Of a DNA stretch of 64,000 nt, positions 2,585 to 63,101 are shown in pieces. The DNA lies in the IMG/VR virus record IMGVR_UViG_3300046559_001153, positions 1 to 64,000 of that record. One strand, given 5' to 3'. The translations under genes and the position numbers were made by a program. Numbering within the stretch: the stretch's first letter is position 1; each line of letters opens with the position of its first letter. The notes under the pieces are model-generated. The model worked only from the letters and a program-made list of their open reading frames with translations. It was not told the DNA's origin and did no database searches.

Positions 2585-3523
2585 ATGATCGCTCAGACAC
2601 TCGAGGGACGCATGTTGGCCATGTGCAATCTGGCCAAAGCCGTCAACGATTCTGACGAGACAACTACGGTCAGTGGCCCATGGGCAGAGGCTGCCGGGTT
2701 GCTGGGAACGACCGTGTCAATCGCCAGTGGAAGGGACAACATCAACGCGGCTCTTGTCGGCAAAATGGATATCGGTACGACGGTTGCGTTCCGCGGTACG
2801 ATCTCTGTGAATGATCACACACGACCGTGGAAGGAGAGGCTGCTCGACTGGATGCAGGACTTCGACGCCGTCCAGACAGACTGGAATGGGGTATTTGTGC
2901 ATTCAGGATTTGCCGAAGCAATAGATTCAATGTGGCCCACGGTTCAATCGCTTATTACCGACGATACCCCTGGCGTGTATTTCACTGGTCACAGCAAAGG
3001 CGGGGCAATGGCCACGCTCGCAGCAATTCAGTTTTACAGACTGACCGGCCGACCGTCACTCGTTACAACGTTTGGAGCAGCTCGCAGCGTAGGTGCCGCA
3101 TCGGCCAATAAGATATTCGGGATGCCAATCTCGATTCACCGATACGAGAATGCCGGCGACATTGTTCCATTGACACCGCCCTGCACGGAGATCGCCGAGC
3201 TGGCTGCCCAGGAACTGGGGCATCCGATCGGCGTCCTTGACTACGAGAGCATTGGGGATTTGAAATTCGTAAACAAGGAACGCACAGTTGATACCTGTTC
3301 AAAGTTCATCAGTCAATTTCGTCAGGGAGCCGCGTTGGCCGAGTTGATCCTGCATGGCAATATGGACGCAATCGTGGATGCCCATGCGATCGGCCTGGGC
3401 GGTGCGTACCAACAAGCAGTTGCACCGGAAGTAACAGGAATAGCCAATTCGCAGGTGGCCAGCCTGTTACAAGGCCGATCCGTCCCTCTTTTCTCGCTTA
3501 TTTCGAAGCAGTTCGATACTTAA
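2585..3523 (+). CDS. Class 3 lipase (alpha/beta hydrolase)
   Basis: VAFRGT, VHSGF, nucleophile elbow TGHSKGGAMA, TFGA, DIVP, late His. Confidence 0.9.
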   Translation: MIAQTLEGRMLAMCNLAKAVNDSDETTTVSGPWAEAAGLLGTTVSIASGRDNINAALVGKMDIGTTVAFRGTISVNDHTRPWKERLLDWMQDFDAVQTDWNGVFVHSGFAEAIDSMWPTVQSLITDDTPGVYFTGHSKGGAMATLAAIQFYRLTGRPSLVTTFGAARSVGAASANKIFGMPISIHRYENAGDIVPLTPPCTEIAELAAQELGHPIGVLDYESIGDLKFVNKERTVDTCSKFISQFRQGAALAELILHGNMDAIVDAHAIGLGGAYQQAVAPEVTGIANSQVASLLQGRSVPLFSLISKQFDT

Positions 3524-3538
3524 CTTTTTGAAAAGTTA
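3521..3538. promoter_or_regulatory. 18-bp palindrome copy 1 (TAACTTTTTGAAAAGTTA)
   Basis: Reverse complement of copies at 38630 and 63084; overlaps lipase stop, 2 nt before sigma ATG. Confidence 0.6.
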
Positions 3539-3540
3539 CA

Positions 3541-4275
3541 ATGCCCACTCCGACCGATTTTCTTGAACCTGCCTATCGCCCCGCGTGGGTAGCTTGGAAG
3601 ACAAAACCGTCTCAGCAGACCACGAGTCATCTGCTGGATACGATCCAGCCCGCGATCACCAAGGCTGTCACGTTGAACATCGGGCCGAAGAGCGACCCGG
3701 TTCTGGGCGGGCACGCCAAACTGTTGGCTCTGCAGGCGATGGAATCGTACGATCCGGCCCGGGCCAGCGTAGGAACGCATTTGACTCGAAATCTACAGCG
3801 GCTTAAACGGCTGAACGCCAGACAAGCTCAAGCCATCCCCATCCCCGAGCACTGGCTCATATCGCATCAAACAGTTCGACGGGCCGAGGATGAATTGAGC
3901 GAGGACCTGGGCCGGGCGCCGACCATGCAGGAAATTGCCAGCCATACGAAGTTACCCATCGAAAAGGTGCAGCAGTTTCGCGGTGCCATCTTCCCGGCGG
4001 CCGAGAGCGATCTGGCTGCGTCCGGCCAAAACTATGTGTCGTCATACGTGCCAGGAGTTCAGCCGGGTTCGACTGCGTGGACAGAGGCAGTTTACTCGGA
4101 CATGGATCCGATCAATCAAAAGATCATGGAACATTCTCTAGGTTTACACGGACAACCCCGTTTGCCTAATCACGAAATTGCCAAGTTGTTACGCTTGTCG
4201 CCAGGAGCCATCTCCCAACGCAAGGCTCGCATTCAACAAACACTGGATAAGGAGTCGGAGCTCTCTCCGTTCTAA
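3541..4275 (+). CDS. Phage sigma-70-family RNA polymerase sigma factor
   Basis: YDPARAS..THL (region 2), IPIPE, ELSEDLGRAPTMQEIA (region 3), EIAKLLRLSPGAISQRK HTH (region 4). Confidence 0.8.
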   Translation: MPTPTDFLEPAYRPAWVAWKTKPSQQTTSHLLDTIQPAITKAVTLNIGPKSDPVLGGHAKLLALQAMESYDPARASVGTHLTRNLQRLKRLNARQAQAIPIPEHWLISHQTVRRAEDELSEDLGRAPTMQEIASHTKLPIEKVQQFRGAIFPAAESDLAASGQNYVSSYVPGVQPGSTAWTEAVYSDMDPINQKIMEHSLGLHGQPRLPNHEIAKLLRLSPGAISQRKARIQQTLDKESELSPF

Positions 4276-10947: not shown

Positions 10948-12492
10948 ATGCTCGAGTTGCCAGTCTACCCGGCCTCGGACCTCGATCGACCGCAACAACT
11001 AATTGCGGCGATCGGTTCATTTTGGGGCAATGTCTATGACGGCCGAGATTTCGTCGTCGATCTCTTGCAGGGCCGAGCCGCCGTCGTACGCCAAGCCTTC
11101 GCCGATCTGCAGGAAACGGCCAGCAGTCTGAGTCGGCACACGATCCCTGTGTTCCACAAAAAGGACTGGCAGCGGCTCACAATTGTCGCCTCGCAGGTGA
11201 ACAACTCGGTTATTAACCCATTGCTGTACGACGCAGGCGCCGCGTATGACAGCGGACTACAGTACAACGGGGCCCTATCCCGGTCCGACTTCGCATTCGC
11301 CTGTCCATCGCCCCTGAGAAACTGCCACACGATTTTCGACGCCCCCTCGACAGCGACTGTGTCATTGTCGTTGAATATCGACTTCATCCTGGACACGGTT
11401 AACGGCGTCGTCGCCTTCCGCAACAATCCATTCACCGACCCCAGGTTCTCGCCTCAGACCGTATTTGACGGGGCGTCATCAGACCAGACGTTGGACCTGT
11501 GGCTGTTCTCGGGAGATTACGAGACAAACCAGCTCTACCTGCAGTATGGCTCTGTGCTGGGTGTCCAGCTTCCATCCAGCGACGCGTACAAGCAATTGCT
11601 GAATGCCGTGTTCGACGCGATGGTGCAAGGCACAGCCATGCAGCAGATCCAGAGTTTCATGTCGGCCATTACAGGGATCCCTCTGGCGGCAGGGACCGAG
11701 GTTGTGCAGCTCGTGACGCAGGACGCGTCAGGGCGGCTGGTGATTACCGACCAAAACGTCTACCGGTTCGGATTCAGCGCTACGCCACTGGTGACCGTGG
11801 GGCAGACCGTAACCCAAGGACAAGCCCTGACGGACGGTCTGCAGATCTACGAATTGAACCAGGGGAAAATTCCCGCGGGTTTACAGTCGCTGGCTGTAGG
11901 CTCCGGTGTCCTGGCCGAGGGCTATTACCAGGATCTGGTCTTCCAAAACATGACCGTCCCGACAGTAGTGACCACTGACGCCAACGGCTTCACTGAGCTC
12001 CAGTTCCAGATCGGTGGATTCCCCGGGGATGTTACCGCGTTCTGGGATTCTGTGCATGCAGCCGGGCTGGCGGCCGGGCAGACGCTGGCCGATTTACTGG
12101 ATACCCGTCCAGTCAAAGACGGTCAGCCCACGGCCATCGCCCTGCCAACCACGATCAACCCGTTGCAGTTTTTGATCTCGAATGTGCTGAGAAGCAACGC
12201 ATTCGTCGTCATGTTCACCCCGTCGAGCGGGAACAGCAACGCAATCGGGTTCGATAACCTGCGGTTGCTGCATAAGATCCTGCCCCCACAAACGATTATG
12301 TTCGTGGTAATCAAGCTGGCCATGGCAGAAGGGCCCTTATTGCCCACCCAAGCGGCTACCGCATCGGCCCCAGGTATCGTAGAATCACTGGGCAAGTTCC
12401 TCATACCGCCGATTTTGCAGGATACAATCAATCCGACAGTTTTCATCACCGAACGTGCCTTGCCTCGATCCCTGGCTGGGCGGTGCCAGTAA
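10948..12492 (+). CDS. Putative baseplate wedge protein
   Basis: IGSFW N-terminus, YK.LL.AVF...QG, VITDQNVY..VG..V..GQ.L; structural context. Confidence 0.55.
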   Translation: MLELPVYPASDLDRPQQLIAAIGSFWGNVYDGRDFVVDLLQGRAAVVRQAFADLQETASSLSRHTIPVFHKKDWQRLTIVASQVNNSVINPLLYDAGAAYDSGLQYNGALSRSDFAFACPSPLRNCHTIFDAPSTATVSLSLNIDFILDTVNGVVAFRNNPFTDPRFSPQTVFDGASSDQTLDLWLFSGDYETNQLYLQYGSVLGVQLPSSDAYKQLLNAVFDAMVQGTAMQQIQSFMSAITGIPLAAGTEVVQLVTQDASGRLVITDQNVYRFGFSATPLVTVGQTVTQGQALTDGLQIYELNQGKIPAGLQSLAVGSGVLAEGYYQDLVFQNMTVPTVVTTDANGFTELQFQIGGFPGDVTAFWDSVHAAGLAAGQTLADLLDTRPVKDGQPTAIALPTTINPLQFLISNVLRSNAFVVMFTPSSGNSNAIGFDNLRLLHKILPPQTIMFVVIKLAMAEGPLLPTQAATASAPGIVESLGKFLIPPILQDTINPTVFITERALPRSLAGRCQ

Positions 12493-12497
12493 CCCGA

Positions 12498-12515
12498 ACC
12501 TTATTAAAAAGTTAA
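12498..12515. promoter_or_regulatory. Palindrome copy 2 (ACCTTATTAAAAAGTTAA)
   Basis: Exact reverse complement of 27814-27831; intergenic, 3 nt before ATG. Confidence 0.55.
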
Positions 12516-12518
12516 GCC

Positions 12519-13100
12519 ATGTTCACACCAGGTATTCGCGGCCGCGGGCGTCTTGGACTGGTTTTGCCCGGCGAGGAATTTAAGTCGGTAAGCCCGTGGC
12601 AACACAACGATGTGCTCTACGACTGGGCGACAATCGTTGGAAACAGGCTGGTCACAAATACGCCGGACTACAAAATCTCGTTCATGTACATCGAGTTCGA
12701 GAACGTTGCCAGCCCGTCTAATCCGGTTTCGCTGCCAATCGTTTATCGCGGCGGCGGACAGGCGTACTATCGCAGCCTGTCAAGCAGCCCCAACAACGAC
12801 TACCTGCGGGTTCCCATTATCTCAGGTGTGCTGACGTCGACTGACATCGACAATTTCCCCGGTGGCAACCTGTTGACGTTCTTTGCCCAGACTCAAGGCC
12901 TTACCGGCGTGAACGGTAAGCCGTTCTCCAACGCGGCAAACTCCAAGGTCTACGGGGGCGCCTTGATTGCAGCGCCTGACCCGGATGACGCGACTCAAGA
13001 CTTGATCTTCGCCCGATTGTACTACGCAGCTGTCGATCAGATCATCAAACCAGCCACGTCGGCACAAGTCGGAATGCAGTGGGAAGAGAATCTCGGATAG
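12519..13100 (+). CDS. Putative baseplate/tail structural protein
   Basis: 193 aa beta-rich ORF in structural run. Confidence 0.55.
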   Translation: MFTPGIRGRGRLGLVLPGEEFKSVSPWQHNDVLYDWATIVGNRLVTNTPDYKISFMYIEFENVASPSNPVSLPIVYRGGGQAYYRSLSSSPNNDYLRVPIISGVLTSTDIDNFPGGNLLTFFAQTQGLTGVNGKPFSNAANSKVYGGALIAAPDPDDATQDLIFARLYYAAVDQIIKPATSAQVGMQWEENLG

Positions 13101-27813: not shown

Positions 27814-27831
27814 TTAACTTTTTAATAAGGT
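27814..27831. promoter_or_regulatory. Palindrome copy 3 (TTAACTTTTTAATAAGGT)
   Basis: Exact reverse complement of 12498-12515. Confidence 0.55.
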
Positions 27832-27843
27832 ACGGGAGACACC

Positions 27844-36336: not shown

Positions 36337-37227
36337 ATGGGACTGACCATTCATTGGGATTTGGAATTCGAAGGAGACAGACAAGAAGCCGTATGGATGA
36401 TGACCACGCTCGAGAATCGAGTTCGTGCTTTGCCGGTATTCCCGGCCCATCATGACTATGTCAACTTACGTTGCGGGCCGCCGGTGACTCGTGGTGGTGG
36501 ATTCGTAGATGGCGCCGTCACGGTGTATTACACCAGCCATTTTGGCGAATCTAAAAGCGAGTGGGTCAATCCCAAGTGGCACTGCGGCTTTCACGTTTTG
36601 CCTGGCGCGGGATGTGAGTCTCTTAATTTCGATCTCTACGAGTATCCAAAAACGGTTCGTGTGGCCACGTACTCGAATCACAAGCAATACCAGGTTGTGA
36701 AAGTCGGGCAGTCCGCCTTCAGCAGCTCCGGGTTTTGCAAGACTGTGTACGCTGGTAGTCCTGCGTCGGGTGGTAGCCCGGAGAACTTCTTGAAATGCCA
36801 TCTGCTTGTCTGCCGCGCGTTGGAGATAGCTTGCGAGCTGGGCTTCAAAGTTGACGTAAACGATGAGAGCGGATATTACGAGAACGAAAATCTGGATCTG
36901 CTCTTGCCGCAAGGCACGTCACTGCGGCGGGTCAGCGAATTGCCGGATGGCTGGTACCAGCGGCTCGATCCGGTCTTACGCCCAAACTATAAATTCGAAA
37001 AGCCCGAGGGCCCTGTTCGTCGTTTGACGAGGGCTGAGCGAGCCAACTACAGCGGCAACGACTACATCGGTTTTGAACCGTACAGCCCGGAAAAGTTCCC
37101 GGTCACAGGCCGCTTCTGGACTCGATCAGAACTCGATCTAGCTGACTACGACGTCACCCATTTAATCGATGCGTCTCCCGGTAGAAGAGCGCCTCGGATT
37201 TTGTTGCACAACTTTTCAAAAAGGTAA
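36337..37227 (+). CDS. Hypothetical protein
   Basis: MGLTIH, PG.GCE, FCKT.YA, F.KCH, V.DE.GY; ends NFSKR. Confidence 0.7.
   Translation: MGLTIHWDLEFEGDRQEAVWMMTTLENRVRALPVFPAHHDYVNLRCGPPVTRGGGFVDGAVTVYYTSHFGESKSEWVNPKWHCGFHVLPGAGCESLNFDLYEYPKTVRVATYSNHKQYQVVKVGQSAFSSSGFCKTVYAGSPASGGSPENFLKCHLLVCRALEIACELGFKVDVNDESGYYENENLDLLLPQGTSLRRVSELPDGWYQRLDPVLRPNYKFEKPEGPVRRLTRAERANYSGNDYIGFEPYSPEKFPVTGRFWTRSELDLADYDVTHLIDASPGRRAPRILLHNFSKR
37209..37227. promoter_or_regulatory. Palindrome copy 4 (CAACTTTTCAAAAAGGTAA)
   Basis: Encodes NFSKR-stop. Confidence 0.55.
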
Positions 37228-38629: not shown

Positions 38630-38647
38630 TAACTTTTCAAAAAGTTA
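38630..38647. promoter_or_regulatory. Palindrome copy 5 (TAACTTTTCAAAAAGTTA)
   Basis: Between convergent stops; identical to 63084-63101. Confidence 0.6.
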
Positions 38648-45051: not shown

Positions 45052-45572
45052 ACCTGCGTAACTGGCTCAACACGTTGGTCCGCCGCATCAAGGTGGCTGT
45101 GTTCGGCCGTCAAAATTTGCCGGTCGTTGAGCCAGAATCACGTACCTACGACCAGATCGAGGCCGCACTAGCTTTCGACACTAGGGTCCTACAAGAGTAC
45201 ACTGACGCGCGATATCGACAACTAGCCCACCTGCGAGGACTCCGCGACTCTCGGACGGTTGTATTTCCGGGACATGAGGTGATCATTAACGGAATCGATT
45301 GGTCGGCCACAGGCCACCAGACGATGCAAGCACGCTGGGAAGCCATGGCCGCTCGCGAGTTGCAGACTAGTGAAGACAGCCGGCTTATTGAGCAGTTGCC
45401 GGCTTCCAAGCAAACTGACACCAAAATTACGCCTCCCCATCCCACTCCCAAACGAGCGGTTCACTGGGTTCCAGGTAAGCCTCGAGTTCTCCTTCGAGAG
45501 CGTACTTCTGCGAGTTCGCCAGATTCGGCCAGCGACCCTGGCTGTGCCACAGAGCCACGCAGCCCATGTTGA
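45048..45572 (+). CDS. Tag protein 5 (..WVPGKPRVLLR plus extension), overlapping terL 3' end
   Basis: TTGA coupling; 146-bp convergent overlap with terL. Confidence 0.55.
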   Translation: MNLRNWLNTLVRRIKVAVFGRQNLPVVEPESRTYDQIEAALAFDTRVLQEYTDARYRQLAHLRGLRDSRTVVFPGHEVIINGIDWSATGHQTMQARWEAMAARELQTSEDSRLIEQLPASKQTDTKITPPHPTPKRAVHWVPGKPRVLLRERTSASSPDSASDPGCATEPRSPC

Positions 45573-47280
45573 CGGCCTGGGCGAAGTCGTCGGGGTGCAT
45601 GGGGTTCTTGCCGATCGTGTAGGCTTCTTTTCCGAATCGTGTCGGAATCTTCTCTTCGACGAGCGACAGGAAGTCGTTCATCAGGCCTTCATGATCCTTG
45701 TCCAGGTAGTCGTACTGGAAGAACCGGATCTCGCAGTTCTTGATCTGTTGGCACGTCAGCAAGAGGCTGCGAGCCTTGTCGACCTGCCAGTGCTCCTTGG
45801 GGTGCTTCTCAGTCGCCAGCTTGAAGGTGAGGATATTCGCAAAGGCTGCACGAACGTAGGCGACCGGCATGATCCTCGACTGGGGCATACCTGTATGCAG
45901 CAGGAATGTTTCACGTAACGACCCGGCGCCCGTGTAGTCATGCACAAGAGCGTCGCACTTGAAGACGCGGAAGAATCTGGCAGCCATCTGAGCTTCGACA
46001 ACGTGTTCAGACGGGTTCAACGATCGATGCCCGTAGATCACGTCAATCTTTCCGTCCGGCAGCATGCCCATGACGGCAAAGGTTGTGAAGCTCTGGAACC
46101 TCTCACCTACGGCACCCCAGTCAACAGACAGGATGACCTTGATGTAGTCCCCTCGAGGAACCATTTCGGCCTGCTCAAACGTATTGCGGTGCGGGAGACT
46201 GGCCGCTCGTTTGAGGTCCGTTCGTGTGACCAGCTTGGTTCCCGTATCGGAGCTCTCGCCCAGGATTTCGTTGTGGAAGATGGCTTGGGTCATGTTGCCA
46301 GCGCCAGCCTGTCTGGCCAGTAGTTCGGCCCATTTTTCCCGGCTTGCATAGTGGGCCGGGAAAATAATCTGCGGCATGTGGTACCCGGCCATCGTTTGCC
46401 GTTTGTCAGCCACCTGGTGGATCCACCAGCCGTTTCTCGGATCGACTGGCTTGCGACATTTGGCACAGATGGTGCCCGGCCGCCTTGGACCGATGTCTGG
46501 GTGCCACGGTCCGAGCATCTTCTCCAGGTCGTGTGTCAGCGCGGGCACGTTGTCGTAATGGCATGCGTCGCACGGTACGATCCATTCGGCCATGCTGGAC
46601 GACGACCAGAGACCCTCGAGCGTGTTATCGAGAGTCAACGGAGTTCCGGTGTACAGCTCCCAGCCCCAGCGCGAGTAGGCCATAACCTGGGTGATCACAC
46701 CGATCAACGAACTGTCCAGGTTTTGAACTTCGTCAAAATTGATCTCGTCGCCCGACACGCCGCGGATACGATTCGCGTCACGAAAGGCAAAACTGAAAAT
46801 CATCATCGATTTGTTGCGGAATGTTTTCTGCAGCACGCTGCCGTTGCTCTTGCTGTTGACGAACAGCGTTCGCACGGGCGAATCGTTGATGAACGGCTCG
46901 ACGTAGTTTGTCGAGAACCGGCGAATCTGCTCGAACAGGGGAGTAACTGTGAGCAGCTTGAAATGCTTAATCGCATTGCACCGAGCCAGACCGATCGCGG
47001 CCAGACTGGTCGATTTTGAGATCTGGCGACCCGCCTTAACGACGGTCACTTTTGGTGAATGCGTTTTGAATAACGGCTCGAACGGAAAATGGTCATCGAG
47101 CGAATAAGGTTTTCCGTTCAGTGTGAACAAACTCGACAGAATCGGCCGCAACGTAGGGATATGCGTCTGTTCGAAAAATCGCAATTCCTTTTTGAGCTTC
47201 GCGAGCTCACGTTTAGAAAGCGGTGGTTTCTTTCTCGGCCCCTCATCCTTTTCAGGAGACAAAATTGCGTCCAAATCCAT
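45427..47280 (-). CDS. terL: Terminase large subunit (lambda gpA-like)
   Basis: KAGRQISKST, RIRG, FDEVQ, GTP, CxxC pairs, GYH..Q, NEILGE, nuclease SVDWG and DDFAQA. Confidence 0.85.
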   Translation of the reverse strand: MDLDAILSPEKDEGPRKKPPLSKRELAKLKKELRFFEQTHIPTLRPILSSLFTLNGKPYSLDDHFPFEPLFKTHSPKVTVVKAGRQISKSTSLAAIGLARCNAIKHFKLLTVTPLFEQIRRFSTNYVEPFINDSPVRTLFVNSKSNGSVLQKTFRNKSMMIFSFAFRDANRIRGVSGDEINFDEVQNLDSSLIGVITQVMAYSRWGWELYTGTPLTLDNTLEGLWSSSSMAEWIVPCDACHYDNVPALTHDLEKMLGPWHPDIGPRRPGTICAKCRKPVDPRNGWWIHQVADKRQTMAGYHMPQIIFPAHYASREKWAELLARQAGAGNMTQAIFHNEILGESSDTGTKLVTRTDLKRAASLPHRNTFEQAEMVPRGDYIKVILSVDWGAVGERFQSFTTFAVMGMLPDGKIDVIYGHRSLNPSEHVVEAQMAARFFRVFKCDALVHDYTGAGSLRETFLLHTGMPQSRIMPVAYVRAAFANILTFKLATEKHPKEHWQVDKARSLLLTCQQIKNCEIRFFQYDYLDKDHEGLMNDFLSLVEEKIPTRFGKEAYTIGKNPMHPDDFAQAVNMGCVALWHSQGRWPNLANSQKYALEGELEAYLEPSEPLVWEWDGEA

Positions 47281-49422: not shown

Positions 49423-49827
49423 ATGGGCGCTTCATTTATTTTGCATGCTTTACCTGATGTGAAAAACAAAACTGACGAACGACTGACTCAGATGACAGAG
49501 ATCATCGATAACCTGTCGCATGACGATCTGGCGATTCTCAGATACGACTGTGCCATACTCGACGAGGCTACAGACGATTCAATCAAAGATGCCCTGGTTG
49601 ACGACCTTGAGGATTACTGGATGCTGGAAGACTCTGGCAGGGAACACGGATCAATGCATCTGCCAGGCTGCAACCTGTCGTACGTGTTTACTGGTGGGTC
49701 TTCCTGGGGTGACCCACCAACTGAACTGAGTGACGGATTTGATTTGCTTAGTTCCTGCGGTCAAATCTTTGACCAGCTGAAGGAATGGGCTACCGCTGAC
49801 CTGATGGACAACTTTTCGAAAAGGTAG
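49423..49827 (+). CDS. Acidic hypothetical protein
   Basis: TGG.SWGD.PT motif; ends NFSKR. Confidence 0.65.
   Translation: MGASFILHALPDVKNKTDERLTQMTEIIDNLSHDDLAILRYDCAILDEATDDSIKDALVDDLEDYWMLEDSGREHGSMHLPGCNLSYVFTGGSSWGDPPTELSDGFDLLSSCGQIFDQLKEWATADLMDNFSKR
49809..49827. promoter_or_regulatory. Palindrome copy 6 (CAACTTTTCGAAAAGGTAG)
   Basis: Encodes NFSKR-stop, like copy 4. Confidence 0.5.
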
Positions 49828-49930
49828 CCTGGGCCTGTTGGTCTGGTTTCGTAGTGGGCCTGGTTTAAGAGGGCTCGTCCGCCCGCTGACAAGCGGGGCG
49901 GCGACGCCCGCATTAAATCTTTACGAAGTA

Positions 49931-53843: not shown

Positions 53844-55994
53844 ATGCTACTTAAGCGTTTGACACTTCGTAACATTGGCGTTCACCAGAAATTGGACATT
53901 ACGTTCAAGCCGGGGTTGGTTGGCATCTTCGGTGCCAACGGGGCCGGCAAGTCGACAATCACTAACTCTGCTTACGCTTGCCTGACTAATGACTTCTCCA
54001 GGTTTCCAGGTACTCGAGATCAAATTATCAATGATCAGTCCCAACCCGGCGATCTGGCAGAGATCGCTTGTGATCTGGATATCGATGGTGTCGAGTACTC
54101 ACTGAAACGTGAGCTCGGCCGTAGCAAGTGTCGCATGGAATTTACTCGCCCCGGGCAGCCGCGGCAGCGAATCGACAAAGACGGAGAATTCCAGCAAGCC
54201 CTCTTCAGCGCTTTGGGATTTCCGAGAGATGTGCTCGACAACTTCGTGTTCATCGACCAGTGGGAGACGTTCGCCTTTCTCAAAGCGACACCGGCCAAAC
54301 GAATGATGGCCTTTCACGGGTTGTGCAATACGGGCAAGGCTGAGCGGATCTGGGACGCGGTTGGTCAACGGATTGCCGCCGATGCCAGTCTTGTGGCTGA
54401 CGTACAGGACAACCTGGCTGAGTTTCGTAAACAGAAGGACGACACGGCGGCCGAGTATGTGAGACAACACACGGCGCTCGCCAGCATGTTGCAGGTCGGG
54501 CCTGTGGTTTTGGCTGATCTCCAGCAGAAGGTTAATGATCTGACGGCGTTGGCTAACCTGCGAGAGAATCTGCGTGAGGCTGAGGAAGCTTTGGCCAGTG
54601 CAGCTGCCTCTTCTCTGGCGGCTGCCACCAAATTGTTGCCGGTCAAGAAGGAGCGTGACCGGTTGCAGTCGGCTGTGGATGCAATCGACACGTCGACAGC
54701 TGAGAAGTGCGTGCCCATTCTGCAGGAGTACATCCTGCAGCAGCGGCAGGTCGCCGAGGACAAGCAGCAGATCGATGAGCTGGCTGAGTTCCTGGCTGAC
54801 ATGGCCCAGGAGCCTGAGCTGGAGCTGCCGGAAGGAATCACGTACGAGCCGATGGAAGAGATCAACAAGCGGTTGATCCTGAACAAGGCCGAACTGGCGA
54901 CGGCCAAGGCCTATGTGAAGAATTTCACAAAATCACCCAAGTGTCCCACCTGCGGTCAGGATGCGACTATGCTACTGGCTAAATACCAGAAGACTGTCGA
55001 CGAGTTGCCAGAGCAGATCCAGCAGGACGAAGAGACGGTCGAATGCATCGCTGATTTCAACGCTGACGTGGTCGTTTTCAGACAACAGGTGTCGGATGCC
55101 CAAGCTAAACTGGGCGCGTTGCGCACGCGTTTGGATAACGCAACGCTCGTCGTTCTAGACGATCCGCACTGGGTGACGGAACCGTTGGCCGCCCTCGAGG
55201 ATTTCAAGCTCACGATCGCCAGACGCAAGTTGGCTGAGGTTGCTCTGGCGACGTATGTCAAGTTGACGCTCACTCCAGCAGAGGCTAAGGCCAACGTGGC
55301 TAAGGGGGCTGTAGCTCCGGCAGAGAAACGCGTGGTTAAACTGACGGCCGATTTGCTCATCTACGGCGAAGCCAGTGCTGACGATTTGCCCGCGGTCAAA
55401 GAGGCATTGGCCACAGCAGTCGCCGCCAATAACAGATACACGACTGCTCATGCGTTGGCCAAAGCTGCCAAAACGACAGCTGAAAACGCTGCAGCGGCGT
55501 ACAAGCGGGCTAAGCAGTCCCTCGAGGATGCCCGCCAGCGTTCCCGGGTGGCCCGCTTGTGGCTTGAGCGGCTGGAAAAGGTCCGAGAGGTCTTTCACAG
55601 AGACGGAGCTCCCAAGCTGGTCGCCCAGAGCCGTCTGGAGAGCCTTGAGGACGATATCAACTTGTTCCTTGAGCCATTCGGCAGCCCGTTCACGGTCAGG
55701 GCGGGCGAGGATTTCAACTTGCTGGCTCAAGTCCCCGGGCACTCTGAACGAGAAGCCACCTGGCTTAGCGGGGGACAAAAGGTCGTCCTGTCGATGGCCT
55801 TCTTGCTGTCACAAAGCCCCGGCATGCTGGTGCTTGATGAGCCTGGCGCAGGCCTGGACACCGCGAACAGGGCCTACCTGCGTACGGCCTTGCAGCATTT
55901 CCAGTCAGTTGCGAAAAGTCGCGGGTTGCAGATCATCATGATCACTCATGACGAAAGCATGGAGAGCTCGTTCAACCAGGTCATTCAGTTGTAA
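53844..55994 (+). CDS. sbcC: SbcC/Rad50-like ATPase
   Basis: GANGAGKST, Q-loop, CPTCG zinc hook, LSGGQ, LVLDEP..GLD, ITHD. Confidence 0.92.
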   Translation: MLLKRLTLRNIGVHQKLDITFKPGLVGIFGANGAGKSTITNSAYACLTNDFSRFPGTRDQIINDQSQPGDLAEIACDLDIDGVEYSLKRELGRSKCRMEFTRPGQPRQRIDKDGEFQQALFSALGFPRDVLDNFVFIDQWETFAFLKATPAKRMMAFHGLCNTGKAERIWDAVGQRIAADASLVADVQDNLAEFRKQKDDTAAEYVRQHTALASMLQVGPVVLADLQQKVNDLTALANLRENLREAEEALASAAASSLAAATKLLPVKKERDRLQSAVDAIDTSTAEKCVPILQEYILQQRQVAEDKQQIDELAEFLADMAQEPELELPEGITYEPMEEINKRLILNKAELATAKAYVKNFTKSPKCPTCGQDATMLLAKYQKTVDELPEQIQQDEETVECIADFNADVVVFRQQVSDAQAKLGALRTRLDNATLVVLDDPHWVTEPLAALEDFKLTIARRKLAEVALATYVKLTLTPAEAKANVAKGAVAPAEKRVVKLTADLLIYGEASADDLPAVKEALATAVAANNRYTTAHALAKAAKTTAENAAAAYKRAKQSLEDARQRSRVARLWLERLEKVREVFHRDGAPKLVAQSRLESLEDDINLFLEPFGSPFTVRAGEDFNLLAQVPGHSEREATWLSGGQKVVLSMAFLLSQSPGMLVLDEPGAGLDTANRAYLRTALQHFQSVAKSRGLQIIMITHDESMESSFNQVIQL

Positions 55995-56009
55995 CTTATC
56001 AAAAAGATA
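55992..56009. promoter_or_regulatory. Palindrome copy 7 (TAACTTATCAAAAAGATA)
   Basis: Overlaps sbcC stop. Confidence 0.5.
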
Positions 56010-56050
56010 AAGGAGGTCCCATTTACGTTCACACGGATCCGACGGGCGTT

Positions 56051-56950
56051 GTGGCTTACAGGGAGAAGTCCACAACGCCCGTCATTTCATCTGAGCTGAA
56101 AGTTGCCCGGTTCGTGGCAGAGCTGTCTGCCAGGGCGCCGTGCGAATACCGCGTGCTCGGCATGACGAGCAACGCGTCGCTGATTTGTCGCCTGGCTACG
56201 GCCGGTTACCGGGTGCGTGTCGGCACTCCGGGAGTCTGTCCCACAGGCGACGCGAGAAAACGACCAGAACTGGCTTTGCAGTGTGCTCTGTCAGTGGCCG
56301 GCCCGGCCAGCATCGGCGGCTGGCACCCGGTTGTCGATCACGATCTTCGAACTTACGAATTGATTTGCTCGATGCAGTGGTGTCGATCGCACGGCGGGCT
56401 TCGACCGACACGCTCGTTGGAGCGGCTGTTGCGTCGACATCCGGCCTGGTCAGCTTTGTCGTTTCCGACAACCGGTACTCTGACTGGCCGCGCTCGAGTT
56501 ATTGAGGCGCTTGTTGATCCGCGGTGGTATGTCGATCCGGCAAGAATGAATTCGGTGGCCAAGCTGCATTCGTATATGGGCTTGCACCCCGATCCGATAT
56601 TGTTGCTGTTGGGTTTCCCCGGCGCAAAATTCAAACCGACTGCGGCGTTTATGGACCGAGCATCGGCTGTGCTGGCTGCTTGGGGAGCCCATGGCCGACG
56701 TCCTGACGATTTGTCACAAATGAAAGACCCGCGTCATTTTCTGTGGAGAATCTATTCCGACTCGGCGGTTCCGCATCGCTGTCTGCGTGCGGCTCGCCGG
56801 TTCATAACGTTTGTCAACCAGGTCTGGCTGGACGCTATCACAAAAACGAGCGGCGACGGGATGCTCGACTTGAAACAGATGCTCAGGCGGGACTGCGACG
56901 TAGCTGCCTACAAAAACTATCTGGAAAGGAATGACTATGCCGGGAGATGA
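56051..56950 (+). CDS. Divergent IS110/Nop-domain-like protein (possible ATT start at 56021)
   Basis: L..HPAW..L, LVDPRWY..SVAKLHSYMGL.P, C-terminal H..LRA.RRFI.FV..VW. Confidence 0.5.
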   Translation: MAYREKSTTPVISSELKVARFVAELSARAPCEYRVLGMTSNASLICRLATAGYRVRVGTPGVCPTGDARKRPELALQCALSVAGPASIGGWHPVVDHDLRTYELICSMQWCRSHGGLRPTRSLERLLRRHPAWSALSFPTTGTLTGRARVIEALVDPRWYVDPARMNSVAKLHSYMGLHPDPILLLLGFPGAKFKPTAAFMDRASAVLAAWGAHGRRPDDLSQMKDPRHFLWRIYSDSAVPHRCLRAARRFITFVNQVWLDAITKTSGDGMLDLKQMLRRDCDVAAYKNYLERNDYAGR

Positions 56951-59673: not shown

Positions 59674-59675
59674 GT

Positions 59676-60341: not shown

Positions 60342-61969
60342 CAGGGATGAAATTCAAAAAGAGAGAAATTGATACGACTGTCGCGACGCTGAGCGAGGCG
60401 GAAGTCGAACTGATGATGAAGACGGCCATTCGACGCGAAGATGTGTTCACGACGGTTCGTGGCCAGCTGACGGCCGAGATTCTGCACAATTATTCGGAGA
60501 TCCTGTTTGTCGTGTGGCTGGTACTTGAGACGCACTACACGAAACACAAGCAGATGCCCAAGTTCCAGACTCTCAGGGCCGAGCTGAAGGCACACTGTTC
60601 CAGACACAAAGAAGGCTCGACCGGGAACCTGGGAATTGACGAACTACGTCAGGCCATTTTGTTTTGTCGAGAAGCCTACTCGATCAAGCTGGCCGATTTT
60701 GATCCATTGTGGGCGATCGGAAAAATTCGATCGTTCCTGGAGGAGCAGCTTCTTGCCAAAGCTAAGAAGTCCCTCGAGGAAGAAGACCGACGCCCCGGCA
60801 ATCTGCCTGATTTTCTCAAGCAGATGCATGTGGCGTCGGAAGCGATTTCCAGCCTGCAGGGCGACAGCGCCGAACTGCCATTCCCGATTGGCTGGGAACC
60901 CCGCCCCTTGCCGGTGACATCGACCGGCATCGATTTTCTGGACAAGTTCATGGGAGGCGGGGATGCTCTGGGAGAGATCGCCGTGACGATTGGTGCAACT
61001 GGCGGATGTAAGACGACGCTGGCCAATCAGATTGCCTGCAGGCGTGCCCAGTATTACTGGACGCAGGCGAGGGATAACCCGGATGCTCCGAAGCAGATGG
61101 TCTACATGGTGCCTTATGAATCGCCGGTTGAGCCGGAACTTCGACAGAGGATTCTGATGTGCCACGCTGTTGTTCGTCGCGACGAGATGGAAGAGAAGGG
61201 TTGGGCCGGTTTGTCGACGTCTTCAACACCTAAGCCTTATGAGCTCGAGATGTTCAGAGGGGCGATCGCCAGTGGACATTTTCGTGGGGAACGCGAGCGT
61301 ATTGAGGATGCGTCAACCATTCTTAATTCGTCGTTACGATTCATCGACTGCAGTGGGGCTGACCGCGCTCACCCTAACCGCGGCGGCGGATTTGTTGACG
61401 AGCTGGCGGCGATTCTTCAAAATGAACTGCGGACCTACCCTGATCGACAGATCGGCACGGTCATTATCGATTACGCCGGCGTGATGGTCGCAAAACATCT
61501 CGCGGCAACTGGTCAGGATTACAGTCAGCTCCGCCATCATCTCGCCAACTTGCCCCTGCAACTTCGCGATCGAATCGCCTTGCCGATGAATTGTTCGATC
61601 TGGCTGATGCATCAGCTGGCTGGCGCCGCCAACAAGAAGTCGGCGTGGGCGAACATGCATCACTCCGATTCGCAGGAATGCAAGACACTCGCAGATAACT
61701 GCAGTTTCGCGTTTGTTCTTGGAAACATCGATGCTAACGGGCATTGTGTTATCCGCTGCACGAAGCATCGTCGTCAGCCCCGTCACGAACAGGAGATCAT
61801 TAAAGTGGAAGGACAACTAGCCCGAGTCCGCAGTACTCAGGGACAATACTACTACGACGCCCGACGTGCCCAGATTGTCAGTTACGCCGACGCCCAGAAA
61901 ACCATGTCAGCAGAAGAAACACGCCCAGCTCAACGTGGCAGTCTGGGAGTACCCGACTATGAGGGGTAA
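60338..61969 (+). CDS. dnaB: DnaB-like (SF4) replicative helicase
   Basis: STGI.FLD..MGGG, GATGGCKTT, IIDY, HQL, KHR. Confidence 0.78.
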   Translation: MTGMKFKKREIDTTVATLSEAEVELMMKTAIRREDVFTTVRGQLTAEILHNYSEILFVVWLVLETHYTKHKQMPKFQTLRAELKAHCSRHKEGSTGNLGIDELRQAILFCREAYSIKLADFDPLWAIGKIRSFLEEQLLAKAKKSLEEEDRRPGNLPDFLKQMHVASEAISSLQGDSAELPFPIGWEPRPLPVTSTGIDFLDKFMGGGDALGEIAVTIGATGGCKTTLANQIACRRAQYYWTQARDNPDAPKQMVYMVPYESPVEPELRQRILMCHAVVRRDEMEEKGWAGLSTSSTPKPYELEMFRGAIASGHFRGERERIEDASTILNSSLRFIDCSGADRAHPNRGGGFVDELAAILQNELRTYPDRQIGTVIIDYAGVMVAKHLAATGQDYSQLRHHLANLPLQLRDRIALPMNCSIWLMHQLAGAANKKSAWANMHHSDSQECKTLADNCSFAFVLGNIDANGHCVIRCTKHRRQPRHEQEIIKVEGQLARVRSTQGQYYYDARRAQIVSYADAQKTMSAEETRPAQRGSLGVPDYEG

Positions 61970-63086
61970 TCTGAAAGCGACCGGCCGCGTTAAGTTGAAA
62001 TCATCTGGCCGTCTGGAACCGGGACAGGTGATTAACCCTAAATTGTACAGGGCTCTCGAGAAACGTTTTGGCGAGGTGCGTGTAGGCTCGCCAGGGCTCG
62101 AGCTGATCGGCAAAACTGAGCGAATTACGACAGCGTCCGGCCGCGATCATCCTGTCTTGTCGGTGAGGTACTGGGGGGAGCATTACGCTGTCTGCTGCCC
62201 CAAATGCGGAGATACCAAACATAGGCTCTATTTCAGCCAGCGATTTGGTGTCAGCGACAAGCACGGGCTCAATAAGAATCTCGTGTATTGCTTCAACGAG
62301 AACTGCTATGCCGAGTGGGAAGACCGAGAACACCTGTACTCTTTGTTGTTCAACTTCAATATCGGTTCTCAGAAAATTACGGATTTGCGTAAAGGCAAGA
62401 CTCTGACTGAGGTCGAGCTGAAGGTGGTGATCCCCGGCATCACTTACAAGTTGGAAGATCTCGATGAAGATCATGCTTCTCGACGATACATTGAAAGCCG
62501 CGGTTTCGATCCAAACACCCTGTCAAAAATCTACGGGGTGTCTTATTGCGCGTTTGCCCAGGATTACCGCGTGCACAGGCGTATCTTGATCCCCGTCTAC
62601 AATGACGGGAACCTTGTCGGCTGGCAGGCTCGCTATGTGGGTGAACTGGATTGGAAGGGTGAGAATAAGTCAGTCAAGAAGTACCATACCTGCCCGGGCA
62701 TGAGGAAGTCTCTTTGCCTGTACAACCTGGACAGGGCTAAGCACTATCCGACCGGGGTAGTTGTTGAAGGTGTGACTGATGTGTGGTCCTTCGGTCCAAT
62801 GGCCGTCTCTGGTTTCGGAGACAAGATCTCCCCAGGTCAAGTCGACTTGCTCGTTAAACATTTTCAGAACAAGTCGTTGTTGATTGTGTTGGATAGTGAG
62901 CCGAGCGCGTTGGAAAAAGCGCACGAAGTCGCGGAAGAACTGCGTGGCCGAATCGTGAAGGGCGTAGCCGTGATAACGTTGCCCGACGGATCTGATCCGG
63001 CTGATCTGGATCGACGAGTTCTGTGGCAGATCGCTAAGAAACAGGCGGCAGAGCAGGGTGTGTTCTGCTCATTCAAACGGGCGTAA
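61959..63086 (+). CDS. dnaG: DnaG-type primase
   Basis: CPKC..H..C..C zinc finger, YIESRG, RILIP, GWQAR, KY, VVEGVTD, DPAD. Confidence 0.85.
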   Translation: MRGNLKATGRVKLKSSGRLEPGQVINPKLYRALEKRFGEVRVGSPGLELIGKTERITTASGRDHPVLSVRYWGEHYAVCCPKCGDTKHRLYFSQRFGVSDKHGLNKNLVYCFNENCYAEWEDREHLYSLLFNFNIGSQKITDLRKGKTLTEVELKVVIPGITYKLEDLDEDHASRRYIESRGFDPNTLSKIYGVSYCAFAQDYRVHRRILIPVYNDGNLVGWQARYVGELDWKGENKSVKKYHTCPGMRKSLCLYNLDRAKHYPTGVVVEGVTDVWSFGPMAVSGFGDKISPGQVDLLVKHFQNKSLLIVLDSEPSALEKAHEVAEELRGRIVKGVAVITLPDGSDPADLDRRVLWQIAKKQAAEQGVFCSFKRA

Positions 63087-63101
63087 CTTTTCAAAAAGTT
63101 A
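63084..63101. promoter_or_regulatory. Palindrome copy 8 (TAACTTTTCAAAAAGTTA)
   Basis: Overlaps dnaG stop; identical to 38630-38647. Confidence 0.6.

What the first reader, a model, noticed from the sequence alone, without database searches (positions are those of the whole stretch)
3521..63101. 18-bp AT-rich palindrome at eight gene junctions across late, accessory and replication blocks
Seen: near-consensus TAACTTTTCAAAAAGTTA at 3521, 12498, 27814, 37209, 38630, 49809, 55992 and 63084, in both orientations, in GC-rich DNA. Copies 38630 and 63084 are identical and 3521 is their reverse complement; 12498 and 27814 are exact reverse complements. Six overlap stop codons, and two unrelated proteins both end NFSKR because of it. 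The A/T-only stem is too weak for an intrinsic terminator. Inference: a site for a dimeric phage protein (repressor, transcription stopper, or partition/organising site) or an RNA-processing signal.
Basis: partly seen in the sequence, partly recalled or inferred. Interest (0 to 1): 0.68.

Follow-up and report, generated by a model that had tools for sequence, protein, structure and literature searches.

The report
Genome-wide gene-junction palindrome in jumbo phage
An 18-base symmetric DNA word sits between genes about every 10 kb along a 224-kb soil phage that carries its own RNA polymerase; sister phages each have a different palindrome in the same kind of place, so it is most likely a phage-specific signal marking where transcription units begin.

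Summary
The window is the first 64 kb of a 224,270-bp jumbo phage from soil and rhizosphere metagenomes. The palindrome T-AACTTTT-NN-AAAAGTT-A has 23 clean copies genome-wide, 8 of them in the window. Chance expects about 0.02 matches in the window, and isolated half-sites hardly occur.

Twenty-two copies fill the gap between a stop codon and the next ribosome site or start codon on the coding strand. One lies inside an ORF, at the same aligned position as the different palindrome of a relative. Spacing is far more even than random (CV 0.46 against 0.97).

The two halves are statistically identical. No variant is compensated, and predicted RNA hairpins average only -2 kcal/mol. It is therefore read as duplex DNA by something two-fold symmetric, not as an RNA hairpin or a terminator.

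The phage encodes a fused beta/beta' RNA polymerase and a sigma-like protein. Relatives at about 50% terminase identity carry their own palindromes in the same contexts (35, 8 or more, and about 13 copies); other relatives carry none.

Best reading (0.4): a lineage-specific, pseudo-symmetric promoter or unit-start site. Main rival (0.28): an operator or roadblock for a dimeric phage protein. No RNA data exist to decide between them.

The parts
3521..3538 (.). Palindrome copy 1 (perfect half-sites, centre TG). It overlaps the TAA stop of ORF 2585-3523 (esterase/lipase-like) and ends 2 nt before the ATG of the sigma-like gene 3541-4275. No SD lies between.
   Evidence: (34.4 bits); gene
12497..12514 (.). 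Palindrome copy 2 (variant AACC...; exact reverse complement of copy 3). It starts 5 nt after the stop of ORF 10948-12492 and ends 4 nt before the ATG of ORF 12519-13100. No SD.
   Evidence: (25.9 bits)
27815..27832 (.). Palindrome copy 3. It lies at the 3' end of a 234-nt gap, 11 nt upstream of the ATG at 27844, with GGGAG between.
   Evidence: (30.3 bits)
37209..37226 (.). Palindrome copy 4 (right half GGTA). It encodes the last five codons (NFSKR) and part of the stop of ORF 36337-37227. The next ORF, 37249-38085 (GP88 family), starts 22 nt downstream.
   Evidence: (27.2 bits)
38630..38647 (.). Palindrome copy 5 (perfect). It is the only copy at a convergent junction, 3 nt after the stop of plus-strand ORF 38339-38626 and overlapping the stop of minus-strand ORF 38645-39850. 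No start codon follows.
   Evidence: (34.6 bits)
49809..49826 (.). Palindrome copy 6 (weakest true copy, centre CG). It encodes NFSKR and the stop of ORF 49423-49827. A possible TTG start lies at 49838.
   Evidence: (21.1 bits)
55992..56009 (.). Palindrome copy 7. It overlaps the TAA stop of the SbcC-like ORF 53844-55994 and is followed at once by AGGAGG and an in-frame ATT at 56021 (or GTG at 56051) of the next ORF.
   Evidence: (26.5 bits)
63084..63101 (.). Palindrome copy 8 (perfect). It overlaps the TAA stop of ORF 61866-63086 and lies 20 nt upstream of the ATG of the UDG-PolA gene (63122-66397), with AAGGAG between. Relative G001 has its own palindrome directly upstream of the orthologous polymerase gene.
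   Evidence: (33.9 bits)
3541..4275 (+). Sigma-like protein (244 aa; Sigma-70 region 3 plus a C-terminal HTH). This is context, not shown to read the palindrome. Together with the fused RNAP genes outside the window (165675-170093 and 176732-180883) it is the phage's own transcription machinery.
   Evidence: virion location of the homologues in phage Arash from PMC10585845

Best explanation
The palindrome is a DNA-level signal that marks the start of transcription units in a jumbo phage that brings its own RNA polymerase.

Shown:
- It is one of 23 near-identical 18-bp two-fold-symmetric sites.
- The sites sit in the tiny gap between a stop codon and the next ribosome site or start codon of the co-directional genes.
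- They recur every ~10 kb over the whole 224 kb.

Inferred:
- The site is read as duplex DNA by a two-fold-symmetric reader: either the phage RNAP holoenzyme on a pseudo-symmetric, easily melted -10-type core, or a lineage-specific dimeric specificity factor.
- Transcription starts at or just beyond its 3' edge. Downstream genes are then either leaderless (start codon overlapping the site or up to 5 nt after it, no SD) or carry a 10-25-nt leader that begins with the SD.
- Sister lineages have rewritten the word while keeping the architecture, as T7, T3 and SP6 did with their promoters.
For: 1. Copy number and cleanness: 23 sites, bimodal matrix scores, top over-represented 9-mer, almost no isolated half-sites.

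2. Position: 21 of 23 sites lie 0-23 nt upstream of a plus-strand start codon.
- Across four phages the gaps fall into two classes: from a 2-nt overlap to 5 nt without an SD (15 sites), and mostly 10-25 nt with an SD.
- This is the pattern expected if the 5' end of the RNA lies at the 3' edge of the site.

3. No other conserved position exists from -60 to +45, and sigma70-like promoters are not enriched upstream. If transcription starts here, the palindrome itself is the promoter.

4. The phage has its own polymerase: a fused beta/beta'-N protein, a beta'-C protein and a sigma-like protein. The homologues are abundant virion proteins in phage Arash. No other strongly repeated junction motif exists, apart from 3 copies of a second motif.

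5. Relatives carry different palindromes in the same context:
- G001: core AAAACCGGTTTT, 35 copies.
- G006: CTCAAAA-N4-TTTTGAG, 8 or more copies in 107 kb.
- G007: TTGATAGA-NN-TCTATCAA, about 13 copies.
- L172 and L175: GTCTTAACGTTAAGAC.

6. Positions are partly orthologous between G000 and G001: upstream of PolA, upstream of the first gene of the RNAP operon, and at the same aligned spot inside a homologous ORF about 60 codons before its stop.

7. At the orthologue of gene 210664-211566, relative G004 has a terminator, then TTTAGATATC, then TATAAT, then 6 nt and the ATG, which is a leaderless promoter layout. G000 has the palindrome, then 5 nt and the ATG, with no SD.

8. Motif numbers are complementary. 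G002 and G004 have no palindrome family but many TTTAGATATC sites. G000 has 3 such sites plus 23 palindromes, and G001 has 0 plus 35.

9. Symmetry does not exclude a promoter. Bacterial bidirectional promoters are pseudo-symmetric (PMC12825309).
Against: - The site carries no polarity at all. Left and right halves are statistically identical, the asymmetric centre occurs in both orientations, and yet every associated gene is on one strand. A stand-alone symmetric promoter would also fire antisense.
- One perfect copy (38630) lies between convergent genes with nothing to express downstream.
- The few minus-strand genes have no copy upstream.
- Sites precede genes of all functional classes, so they do not define a temporal class.
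- Other promoter types clearly exist, for example the TTGACA-type promoter before gene 190165.
- The right halves of the four palindromes do not share a sigma70-like -10 element.
- Because the motif starts with TAA and intergenic gaps are minimal, most copies are as close to a stop codon as to a start codon.
- There are no RNA data. All 21 runs holding the phage are on record as DNA (flagged 'DNA?').
Confidence: 0.4

Rival explanations
1. Operator or roadblock ('stoperator-like') sites. A lineage-specific homodimeric phage DNA-binding protein sits on each palindrome and stops or gates RNA polymerase reading from one gene block into the next. This cuts the co-directional genome into ~10-kb regulated units without starting transcription there.
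For: - Perfect two-fold symmetry, 18-22 bp, with half-site centres about one helical turn apart, and uncompensated half-site variants. This is the classic signature of a dimeric HTH operator.
- Sites lie in short gaps in all gene blocks, at a convergent junction (38630) and once inside an ORF, as described for stoperators (from memory).
- Even spacing.
- Each of the three strong TTTAGCTATCAG/sigma70-like promoters is followed 1.6-2.2 kb later by a palindrome (P about 0.01, post hoc).
- A transcription activator is excluded by geometry. The site centre is only 8-34 nt from the start codon.
Against: - No candidate protein was found. There is no Cro/CI-type HTH, no ParB and no integrase.
- The proteins shared only by palindrome-bearing phages have no Pfam or PHROG DNA-binding hit, and the two that are also found in G007 are acidic in G000.
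- A block 60 codons before the end of a conserved ORF, kept in two phages, would truncate that message.
- Genes with no SD and a start codon overlapping the site or up to 5 nt after it, including one with no adjacent upstream gene (163636), are hard to translate from a read-through transcript.
- The phage already uses canonical terminators.
- The likely lifestyle is lytic.
Confidence: 0.28
2. Architectural or topological punctuation. The palindromes are evenly spaced loading, anchoring or cruciform sites for a DNA-organising activity (a clamp-like or nucleoid-like protein, a supercoil-domain barrier, replication or recombination entry). They sit in gene gaps only because such a word cannot be encoded inside genes.
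For: - Spacing is much more regular than random gene starts in two genomes: CV 0.46 and 0.37 against 0.97 and 0.93, none of 20,000 random draws as even (P below 1e-4), with largest gaps of 17.2 and 12.5 kb.
- Sites occur in all gene blocks regardless of function.
- The symmetry fits.
- An A/T-rich palindrome in G+C-rich DNA is prone to melting or extrusion (inference).
Against: - No ParB-family gene and no type IIA topoisomerase gene.
- The word can be placed inside a coding sequence (189954 and its G001 counterpart), yet almost never is.
- Tight registration with SD and start codons, and the two-class gap distribution, are not needed for such a role.
- In the 40% G+C relative G007 the palindrome is not unusually A/T-rich.
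Confidence: 0.12
3. RNA-level signal. The transcribed palindrome forms a hairpin just 5' of the ribosome site that is cut by, or binds, a phage or host factor (processing, stabilisation or translational control).
For: - The location between cistrons next to the SD is where T7 RNase III sites and translational operators lie (from memory).
- The consensus can draw a 7-bp stem with a 4-nt loop.
Against: - Hairpins are marginal. G000 averages -2.0 kcal/mol with three sites at 0.0, and G001 averages -3.2.
- Among 184 pair cells there are 0 compensatory and 0 wobble changes. All 29 departures break a pair, and pairing is no better than in column shuffles.
- The outermost, often unpaired, bases are among the best conserved.
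- The loop orientation is irrelevant.
- No Rfam match.
Confidence: 0.07
4. Binding sites for a host global regulator, or a selfish palindromic repeat (REP- or MITE-like) that spread through intergenic DNA.
For: - The palindrome differs completely between related phages, which presumably have different hosts (G+C from 40 to 69%).
- Two pairs or triplets of copies share the same double variants (12498 and 27814; 96771, 129412 and 176693), as copying would give.
Against: - Even spacing and partly orthologous positions between phages whose palindromes differ argue for selected, co-evolving sites rather than random spread.
- 18 bp is far below REP or MITE size, and there are no flanking repeats.
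- 23-35 evenly placed sites for a host regulator on a lytic phage would be unprecedented.
- An exact scan of IMG/VR gave only single chance copies in unrelated contigs.
Confidence: 0.08

Closest known systems
Lineage-specific promoters of phage-encoded RNA polymerases (T7, T3, SP6; phiKZ and AR9 early and late motifs)
   Same: - One short conserved word repeated 15-50 times directly upstream of genes.
- It is the most over-represented non-coding motif of the genome.
- It differs between sister phages that share the polymerase.
- The phage encodes, and in the relative Arash packages, its own RNAP.
   Different: - Those promoters are asymmetric and oriented (from memory; AR9 and phiKZ as summarised in the abstracts and excerpts of PMC9209446 and PMC13282480). 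This element is strictly two-fold symmetric.
- The polymerase here is a cellular-type fused beta/beta' enzyme with a sigma-like subunit. The 2021 jumbo-phage survey did not record that combination (PMC7824862).
Pseudo-symmetric bidirectional bacterial promoters (Warman, Grainger and colleagues)
   Same: A short, A/T-rich, symmetric core that can engage RNAP in either orientation. The commonest divergent-TSS distance is 18 bp (PMC12825309).
   Different: - Those rest on a shared sigma70 -10 hexamer. Here 18-22 bp are conserved, including outer bases.
- The four lineage palindromes share no common -10-like hexamer.
- No TSS data exist.
Mycobacteriophage L5 / Cluster A stoperators
   Same: Tens of copies of one short site in short intergenic gaps throughout early and late gene blocks. 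They are proposed or shown to stop elongating RNAP when bound by a phage protein (from memory).
   Different: - Stoperators are 13-bp, asymmetric and oriented with transcription, and belong to temperate phages with an immunity repressor.
- Here the site is symmetric, and no integrase or recognisable repressor is present.
Streptomyces phage phiC31 conserved inverted repeats (CIRs)
   Same: A palindrome of about 17 bp, repeated about 18 times, mostly intergenic, read by a phage DNA-binding protein (from memory).
   Different: - phiC31 is a 41-kb temperate phage using host RNAP.
- CIRs cluster in the early region rather than being evenly spaced over the genome.
KorB operator (OB) network of IncP plasmids / ParB-parS
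   Same: A 13-16-bp palindrome scattered at a dozen places around a replicon, some at promoters and some not, read by a dimeric protein (from memory).
   Different: No ParB-family gene in this phage. The sites here are tied to gene starts.
Start-associated sequences (SAS) of Cluster K mycobacteriophages
   Same: A repeated motif a few bases upstream of many start codons. Its function is still unknown (from memory; the cluster K context appears in the abstract of PMC11373665).
   Different: SAS is asymmetric and contains the ribosome-binding site itself. Here the SD, when present, follows the palindrome.

Membership tests
Intrinsic (Rho-independent) terminator | Stable G+C-rich stem-loop | tested here: not met
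   Predicted dG runs from 0 to -4.3 kcal/mol, with a mean of -2.0.
Intrinsic (Rho-independent) terminator | Run of U/T directly after the stem | tested here: not met
   The flanks show an SD or a start codon, not a T-run. 19 canonical hairpin-plus-T-run sites lie elsewhere on the coding strand.
Stoperators (Cluster A mycobacteriophages) | Many copies in short intergenic gaps across gene blocks | tested here: met
   23 copies, 22 of them at gene junctions.
Stoperators (Cluster A mycobacteriophages) | Asymmetric site whose orientation follows the direction of transcription | tested here: not met
   Left and right halves are indistinguishable, and the centre occurs in both orientations.
Stoperators (Cluster A mycobacteriophages) | Temperate phage with integrase and immunity repressor | tested here: not met
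   No Phage_integrase and no HTH_3 match in the genome, with the controls positive. Most of the proteome is unannotated, so a novel repressor cannot be excluded.
phiC31-type conserved inverted repeats / dimeric-repressor operators | 17-22-bp two-fold-symmetric site with conserved half-sites about 10 bp apart | tested here: met
phiC31-type conserved inverted repeats / dimeric-repressor operators | Bound by a phage-encoded dimeric protein | not testable with these tools
   No candidate was identified. Needs EMSA or pull-down.
Promoter of a phage-encoded RNAP | Phage encodes its own RNAP | tested here: met
   Rpb2_6 at 147.8 bits in a 1472-aa beta/beta'-N fusion, beta'-C in a second ORF, and a sigma-like protein.
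Promoter of a phage-encoded RNAP | Primary transcript 5' ends at a fixed distance from the motif | not testable with these tools
   No RNA run holds the phage. The only indirect support is the two-class spacing to start codons.
Promoter of a phage-encoded RNAP | Oriented (asymmetric) recognition sequence | tested here: not met
   The motif is symmetric. Pseudo-symmetric promoters are, however, known in bacteria.
N4-type hairpin promoter | Hairpin whose stem is kept by compensatory change, plus a giant single-subunit virion RNAP | tested here: not met
   0 compensatory changes. There is no T7/N4-type RNA_pol match, but that control rang nowhere, so the absence is weak. The largest window ORF is 1371 aa.
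KorB/ParB operator network | ParB-family protein encoded by the replicon | tested here: not met
   No ParB_N match, with the control positive in 11 of 14 genomes.
Known RNA family (Rfam) | Match at gathering threshold | tested here: not met
   0 matches in the window plus two further loci.
REP/BIME-like extragenic palindromes | 35-40-bp imperfect palindromes with an associated RAYT transposase | tested here: inconclusive
   The length (18 bp) does not fit. No transposase search was run.

The most novel reading that the evidence does not exclude
A clade of soil, freshwater and other environmental jumbo phages carries a virion-type, sigma-containing, fused beta/beta' RNA polymerase. It uses a stand-alone, strictly symmetric 16-22-bp word as a genome-wide punctuation mark placed every 6-10 kb. 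The word has been rewritten at least four times among sister lineages.

It would be either a new class of symmetric promoter for a cellular-type viral RNAP, or a transcription-gating or insulating system run by an unrecognised dimeric protein in a lytic phage.
Probability: 0.2. Interest if true: 0.8.

Novelty: new variant of a known kind. Interest (0 to 1): 0.62.

Why it matters
- Transcription in jumbo phages with their own multisubunit polymerase is understood only for the phiKZ and AR9 groups, whose polymerases lack sigma. This clade pairs a fused beta/beta' enzyme with a sigma-like subunit. Its only cultured relatives found are Salmonella phage Arash and some Vibrio phages, at about 30% RNAP identity. 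Nothing is known about its signals.
- A clean, 23-35-copy, lineage-specific word at gene junctions gives a direct handle on how such genomes are cut into expression units. It offers a ready set of natural specificity swaps for finding the protein that reads it.
- The element could also serve as an orthogonal regulatory part.
- The very even spacing and strict symmetry are unusual for promoters. If the roadblock or architectural reading is right instead, it would show a stoperator-like or insulator-like logic outside temperate actinophages.

Tried and rejected
- Nucleotide search of the window against GenBank phages: no match.
- Exact scan of IMG/VR for the 18-mer: only single, apparently chance copies in unrelated contigs.
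- PolA as a single-protein probe of IMG/VR: nothing. A TerL alignment was needed.
- The same motif in five whole relatives: absent.
- G002, G004, G008 and the first 50 kb of Arash: no repeated palindrome family.
- RNA evidence: all 21 holders are on record as DNA (flagged 'DNA?'), from soil and rhizosphere. Read laying was therefore not used, because contigs cannot show RNA ends.
- Search for the reader protein:
  - Pfam and PHROGs on the genes downstream of sites and on the 21 genes shared only with G001 gave no DNA-binding domain.
  - Presence/absence across seven genomes left only a 134-aa protein, a 135-aa protein and a glycosyl/methyl-transferase-like protein. The two small ones are acidic in G000.
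  - No ParB, HTH_3, integrase or topoisomerase IIA.
- Extra promoter elements: no conserved column from -60 to +45, and no enrichment of sigma70-like -35/-10 pairs upstream.
- Canonical terminators directly upstream of palindromes: only 2 of 19.
- A gene caller trained on both strands failed on the 69% G+C genome, so the minus-strand test in G001 is void.
- The gene after site 189954 has no match in GenBank phages, so its identity (capsid?) is unknown.
- Literature: nothing on palindromic junction repeats in this clade.
- The costly representative-protein search, the structure and complex predictions and alternative genetic codes were not used.

Full report
**What the window is**

The window is bases 1-64000 of a 224,270-bp IMG/VR virus record. 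The record has a 127-bp direct terminal repeat, is 55.5% G+C, and has nearly all genes on the plus strand. Twenty-one soil and rhizosphere DNA runs hold it. None is RNA.

Annotated genes in and beyond the window:
- a baseplate-wedge-like gene;
- a gpA-type large terminase on the minus strand (45427-47280);
- an SbcC-like gene;
- a family-A DNA polymerase with an N-terminal UDG-superfamily domain (63122-66397);
- a 244-aa sigma-like protein (3541-4275) with Sigma-70 region 3 and a C-terminal HTH.

Outside the window, one 1472-aa ORF carries beta-subunit domains followed by the catalytic beta' domain 2. A second ORF carries beta' domain 5 followed by LigD phosphoesterase and DNA ligase domains.

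The nearest cultured relatives are Salmonella phage Arash and Vibrio phages D181, D148 and D69, at only 26-30% identity in TerL and RNAP. In Arash the beta, beta' and sigma proteins are among the most abundant virion proteins (PMC10585845). The 2021 survey of jumbo phages recorded no group that combines a multisubunit RNAP with a sigma factor (PMC7824862).

**Check of the observation**

- At up to 3 mismatches there are 12 strand-matches, against 0.02 expected from dinucleotide shuffles.
- The identities and reverse-complement relations hold.
- Six copies overlap stop codons.
- The two NFSKR protein ends are real.

Genome-wide the family has 23 members:
- A symmetric weight matrix gives 23 hits at 21-35 bits, and the next best is 11.5.
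- TAACTTTTT is the most over-represented 9-mer of the genome.
- All 13 copies of TAACTTT and 15 of 17 copies of AAAGTTA lie inside the sites, so half-sites essentially never occur alone.

**Anatomy**

The consensus is T-A-A/c-C-T-T-T-T-N-N-A-A-A-A-G-T/g-T-A.
- Left and right halves have the same base frequencies at every position.
- The central dinucleotide occurs as TG, CA, CG, TA and others, in both orientations, upstream of plus-strand genes.
- No other column between -60 and +45 is conserved.

Twenty-one of the 23 copies end 0-23 nt before a plus-strand start codon, or overlap it by a base or two. Most also abut or overlap the stop codon of the preceding ORF, so the palindrome is essentially the whole intergenic spacer. 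Two copies are exceptions:
- Copy 38630 lies between convergent genes.
- Copy 189954 lies inside an ORF.

Spacing along the genome is strikingly even. The coefficient of variation is 0.46 with a largest gap of 17.2 kb. Random draws of gene starts give 0.97 ± 0.19, and none of 20,000 draws was as even.

**RNA hairpin or DNA site**

Folding each copy gives a mean of -2.0 kcal/mol, and three copies do not fold at all. On the alignment of all 23 copies, the eight-pair stem behaves as follows:
- It shows no change on both sides and no wobble replacement.
- All 29 departures from consensus break a pair.
- The paired fraction (84.2%) is no higher than in column shuffles (86.1%).

The commonest variant is A to C in one half, equivalent to T to G in the other. 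It occurs nine times and is never matched on the partner side. The outer bases, which are often unpaired as a result, are among the best conserved. No Rfam family matches.

There is no T-run after the palindrome, while 19 canonical hairpin-plus-T-run terminators exist elsewhere on the coding strand.

The element is therefore a sequence-specific, two-fold-symmetric duplex-DNA site. It is not a structural RNA or a terminator.

**Relatives**

A TerL profile found 233 related loci in IMG/VR, all at about 45-51% identity. The G000 word is absent from five whole relatives.

Several relatives have their own word in the same context:

| Relative | G+C | Size | Palindrome | Copies | Notes |
|---|---|---|---|---|---|
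| G001 | 69% | 224 kb | about 22 bp around AAAACCGGTTTT | 35 | directly before SD or start; halves symmetric; spacing CV 0.37 |
| G006 | 62% | 107-kb fragment | CTCAAAA-N4-TTTTGAG | at least 8 | asymmetric centre occurs in both orientations |
| G007 | 40% | 156 kb | TTGATAGA-NN-TCTATCAA | about 13 | same 8+2+8 geometry as here |
| L172 and L175 | 44-47% | about 20-kb loci | GTCTTAACGTTAAGAC | three per 20 kb | |

Other relatives have no palindrome family: G002, G004, G008 and the first 50 kb of Arash. Instead, G002 and G004 carry an oriented word, TTTAGATATC(A). It often follows a terminator and precedes small genes. G000 has three copies of that type (TTTTTAGCTATCAG), each followed by sigma70-like -35 and -10 hexamers.

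G000 shares 74 genes with G001, against 46 shared by all four genomes (G000, G001, G002 and G004), so the two palindrome-bearing phages are closer to each other.

**Positional conservation**

G000 and G001 both have their respective palindromes at these places:
- directly upstream of the DNA polymerase gene;
- directly upstream of the first small gene of the RNAP operon;
- within one gene of each other at several further places;
- at the same aligned position inside a homologous ORF, in a variable linker about 60 codons before the stop. Downstream, between the palindrome and the next gene, lies a conserved TTGACA hexamer (a promoter-like -35) that is present before that gene in all four phages.

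At the orthologue of gene 210664-211566 the two layouts differ as follows:
- G004 has a terminator, then TTTAGATATC, 10 nt, TATAAT, 6 nt and the ATG. This is a leaderless promoter layout.
- G000 has its palindrome, 5 nt and the ATG, with no SD.

**How it most likely works**

Some readings are excluded or disfavoured:
- A terminator is excluded (above).
- An RNA hairpin is disfavoured (above).
- An upstream activator site is excluded by geometry. The site centre is only 8-34 nt from the start codon.
- An operator lying downstream of a conventional promoter is disfavoured. No conserved or enriched -35/-10 pair lies upstream.

Two readings remain.

*(a) Unit-start signal or promoter.* The palindrome itself is the promoter for the phage's own polymerase.
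- The start-codon gaps fall into two classes in four phages: from a 2-nt overlap to 5 nt without an SD, and mostly 10-25 nt with an SD. That is what a 5' end at the 3' edge of the site would give.
- The phage needs dozens of promoters, and this is its only abundant junction word.
- Palindrome numbers and TTTAGATATC numbers are complementary across relatives.
- The in-ORF copy conserved in two phages makes sense as an internal promoter but not as a block.
- Symmetric promoters are a known bacterial phenomenon (PMC12825309).

*(b) Operator or roadblock for an unidentified dimeric protein.*
- It is favoured by the strict symmetry, by the convergent-junction copy and by the spread over all gene classes.
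- Each of the three strong oriented promoters is followed by a palindrome 1.6-2.2 kb downstream (post hoc P about 0.01).

I put (a) at 0.40 and (b) at 0.28. An architectural or topological role, suggested by the even spacing, gets 0.12. An RNA-level role gets 0.07, and a host-factor or selfish origin gets 0.08.

What is shown:
- the existence, symmetry, copy number, position and spacing of the sites;
- the lack of covariation;
- lineage-specific replacement of the word and partial positional orthology.

What is inferred: which protein reads the site, and whether RNA starts or stops there.

**The reader protein was not found**

- Genes next to the sites, and the 21 genes shared only by G000 and G001, have no DNA-binding Pfam or PHROG match.
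- Three G000 genes are present in G001 and G007 but absent from G002, G004 and G008. The two small ones are acidic in G000, and the third looks like a glycosyl- or methyl-transferase.
- ParB, Cro/CI-type HTH, tyrosine integrase and topoisomerase IIA are absent.

**Comparison with known systems, and novelty**

The closest functional analogues are:
- lineage-specific promoters of phage RNAPs;
- pseudo-symmetric bacterial promoters;
- Cluster A stoperators;
- phiC31 conserved inverted repeats;
- the KorB operator network;
- Cluster K start-associated sequences.

The element fails a defining feature of each family that could be tested (see the membership table), so I file it under none of them. 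It is a new variant of the known kind 'multi-copy phage cis-regulatory word'. It occurs in an unstudied clade with an unusual sigma-plus-fused-RNAP machinery, and it has two uncommon properties: strict symmetry and even genome-wide spacing.

I found no paper describing it.

**Limits**

- Gene calls are my own codon-score heuristic, so start codons are provisional.
- Relatives are metagenomic contigs, some of them incomplete.
- Statements marked 'from memory' were not checked against a paper.

Noticed in passing
G000 165675-170093 and 176732-180883 (outside the window; loci L010:13675-18093 and L011:6732-10883): The phage RNAP is arranged unusually. One 1472-aa ORF joins beta domains to the catalytic beta' domain 2. 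The beta' C-terminal part sits in a 1383-aa ORF that continues into LigD-type phosphoesterase and ATP-dependent DNA ligase domains. Phage Arash has the same fused beta at 30% identity.
   Followed up: partly
window 3541-4275: A sigma-like protein (Sigma-70 region 3 plus a C-terminal HTH; region 2 not detected) is encoded among structural genes, directly after a perfect palindrome and without an SD. Its Arash homologue is a virion protein.
   Followed up: partly
G000 144710, 175069, 194776 (L009, L011, L012): A second, oriented motif, TTTTTAGCTATCAG, occurs three times. Each copy lies right after a G+C hairpin with a T-run and before sigma70-like -35/-10 hexamers. Relatives G002 and G004 have 13-22 copies of TTTAGATATC(A), clustered with terminators in a small-gene region. 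Each G000 copy lies 1.6-2.2 kb upstream of a palindrome.
   Followed up: partly
G000 190095-190100 and orthologous places in G001, G002, G004: A TTGACA hexamer with a plausible -10 element is conserved upstream of the 420-aa gene 190165-191427 in all four phages. This suggests a sigma70-type promoter for a probably highly expressed gene of unknown function.
   Followed up: no
G000 95390-96160 (L006:15390-16160): About 770 bp have no convincing ORF. The stretch holds palindrome 95626 and a degenerate copy at 95681. There is no Rfam match.
   Followed up: partly
G000 about 155600-155680 (L010:3600-3680): A tRNA T-arm-like GGTTCGATCCCC lies just upstream of palindrome 155684 and was not called by ARAGORN. 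The only tRNA called is tRNA-His at 128985-129059.
   Followed up: no
G000 187518-190133 (L011:17518-20000 onward): This ORF contains Hint and LAGLIDADG domains (an intein) and is 873 aa, against 519 aa for the G001 homologue. The in-ORF palindrome lies in its variable C-terminal linker.
   Followed up: partly
window 63122-66397: The family-A DNA polymerase carries an N-terminal uracil-DNA-glycosylase-superfamily domain and a 3'-5' exonuclease domain in one 1091-aa protein.
   Followed up: no
window 56010-56051: The ORF after the SbcC-like gene has a strong AGGAGG followed 4 nt later by an in-frame ATT (56021). The first canonical start is GTG at 56051. An ATT start is possible.
   Followed up: no
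window 38645-39850 and 45427-47280: The only two solid minus-strand genes of the genome are a 401-aa ORF of unknown function and the large terminase. Neither has a palindrome upstream of its start.
   Followed up: partly
G001 42678-42694, 53991-54010, 148879-148895 (loci L214, L219): In three G001 copies the bases just upstream (CCGGTT) pair with the palindrome core, giving a hairpin followed by TTTTT. A few copies of that lineage's palindrome could therefore double as weak intrinsic terminators.
   Followed up: no
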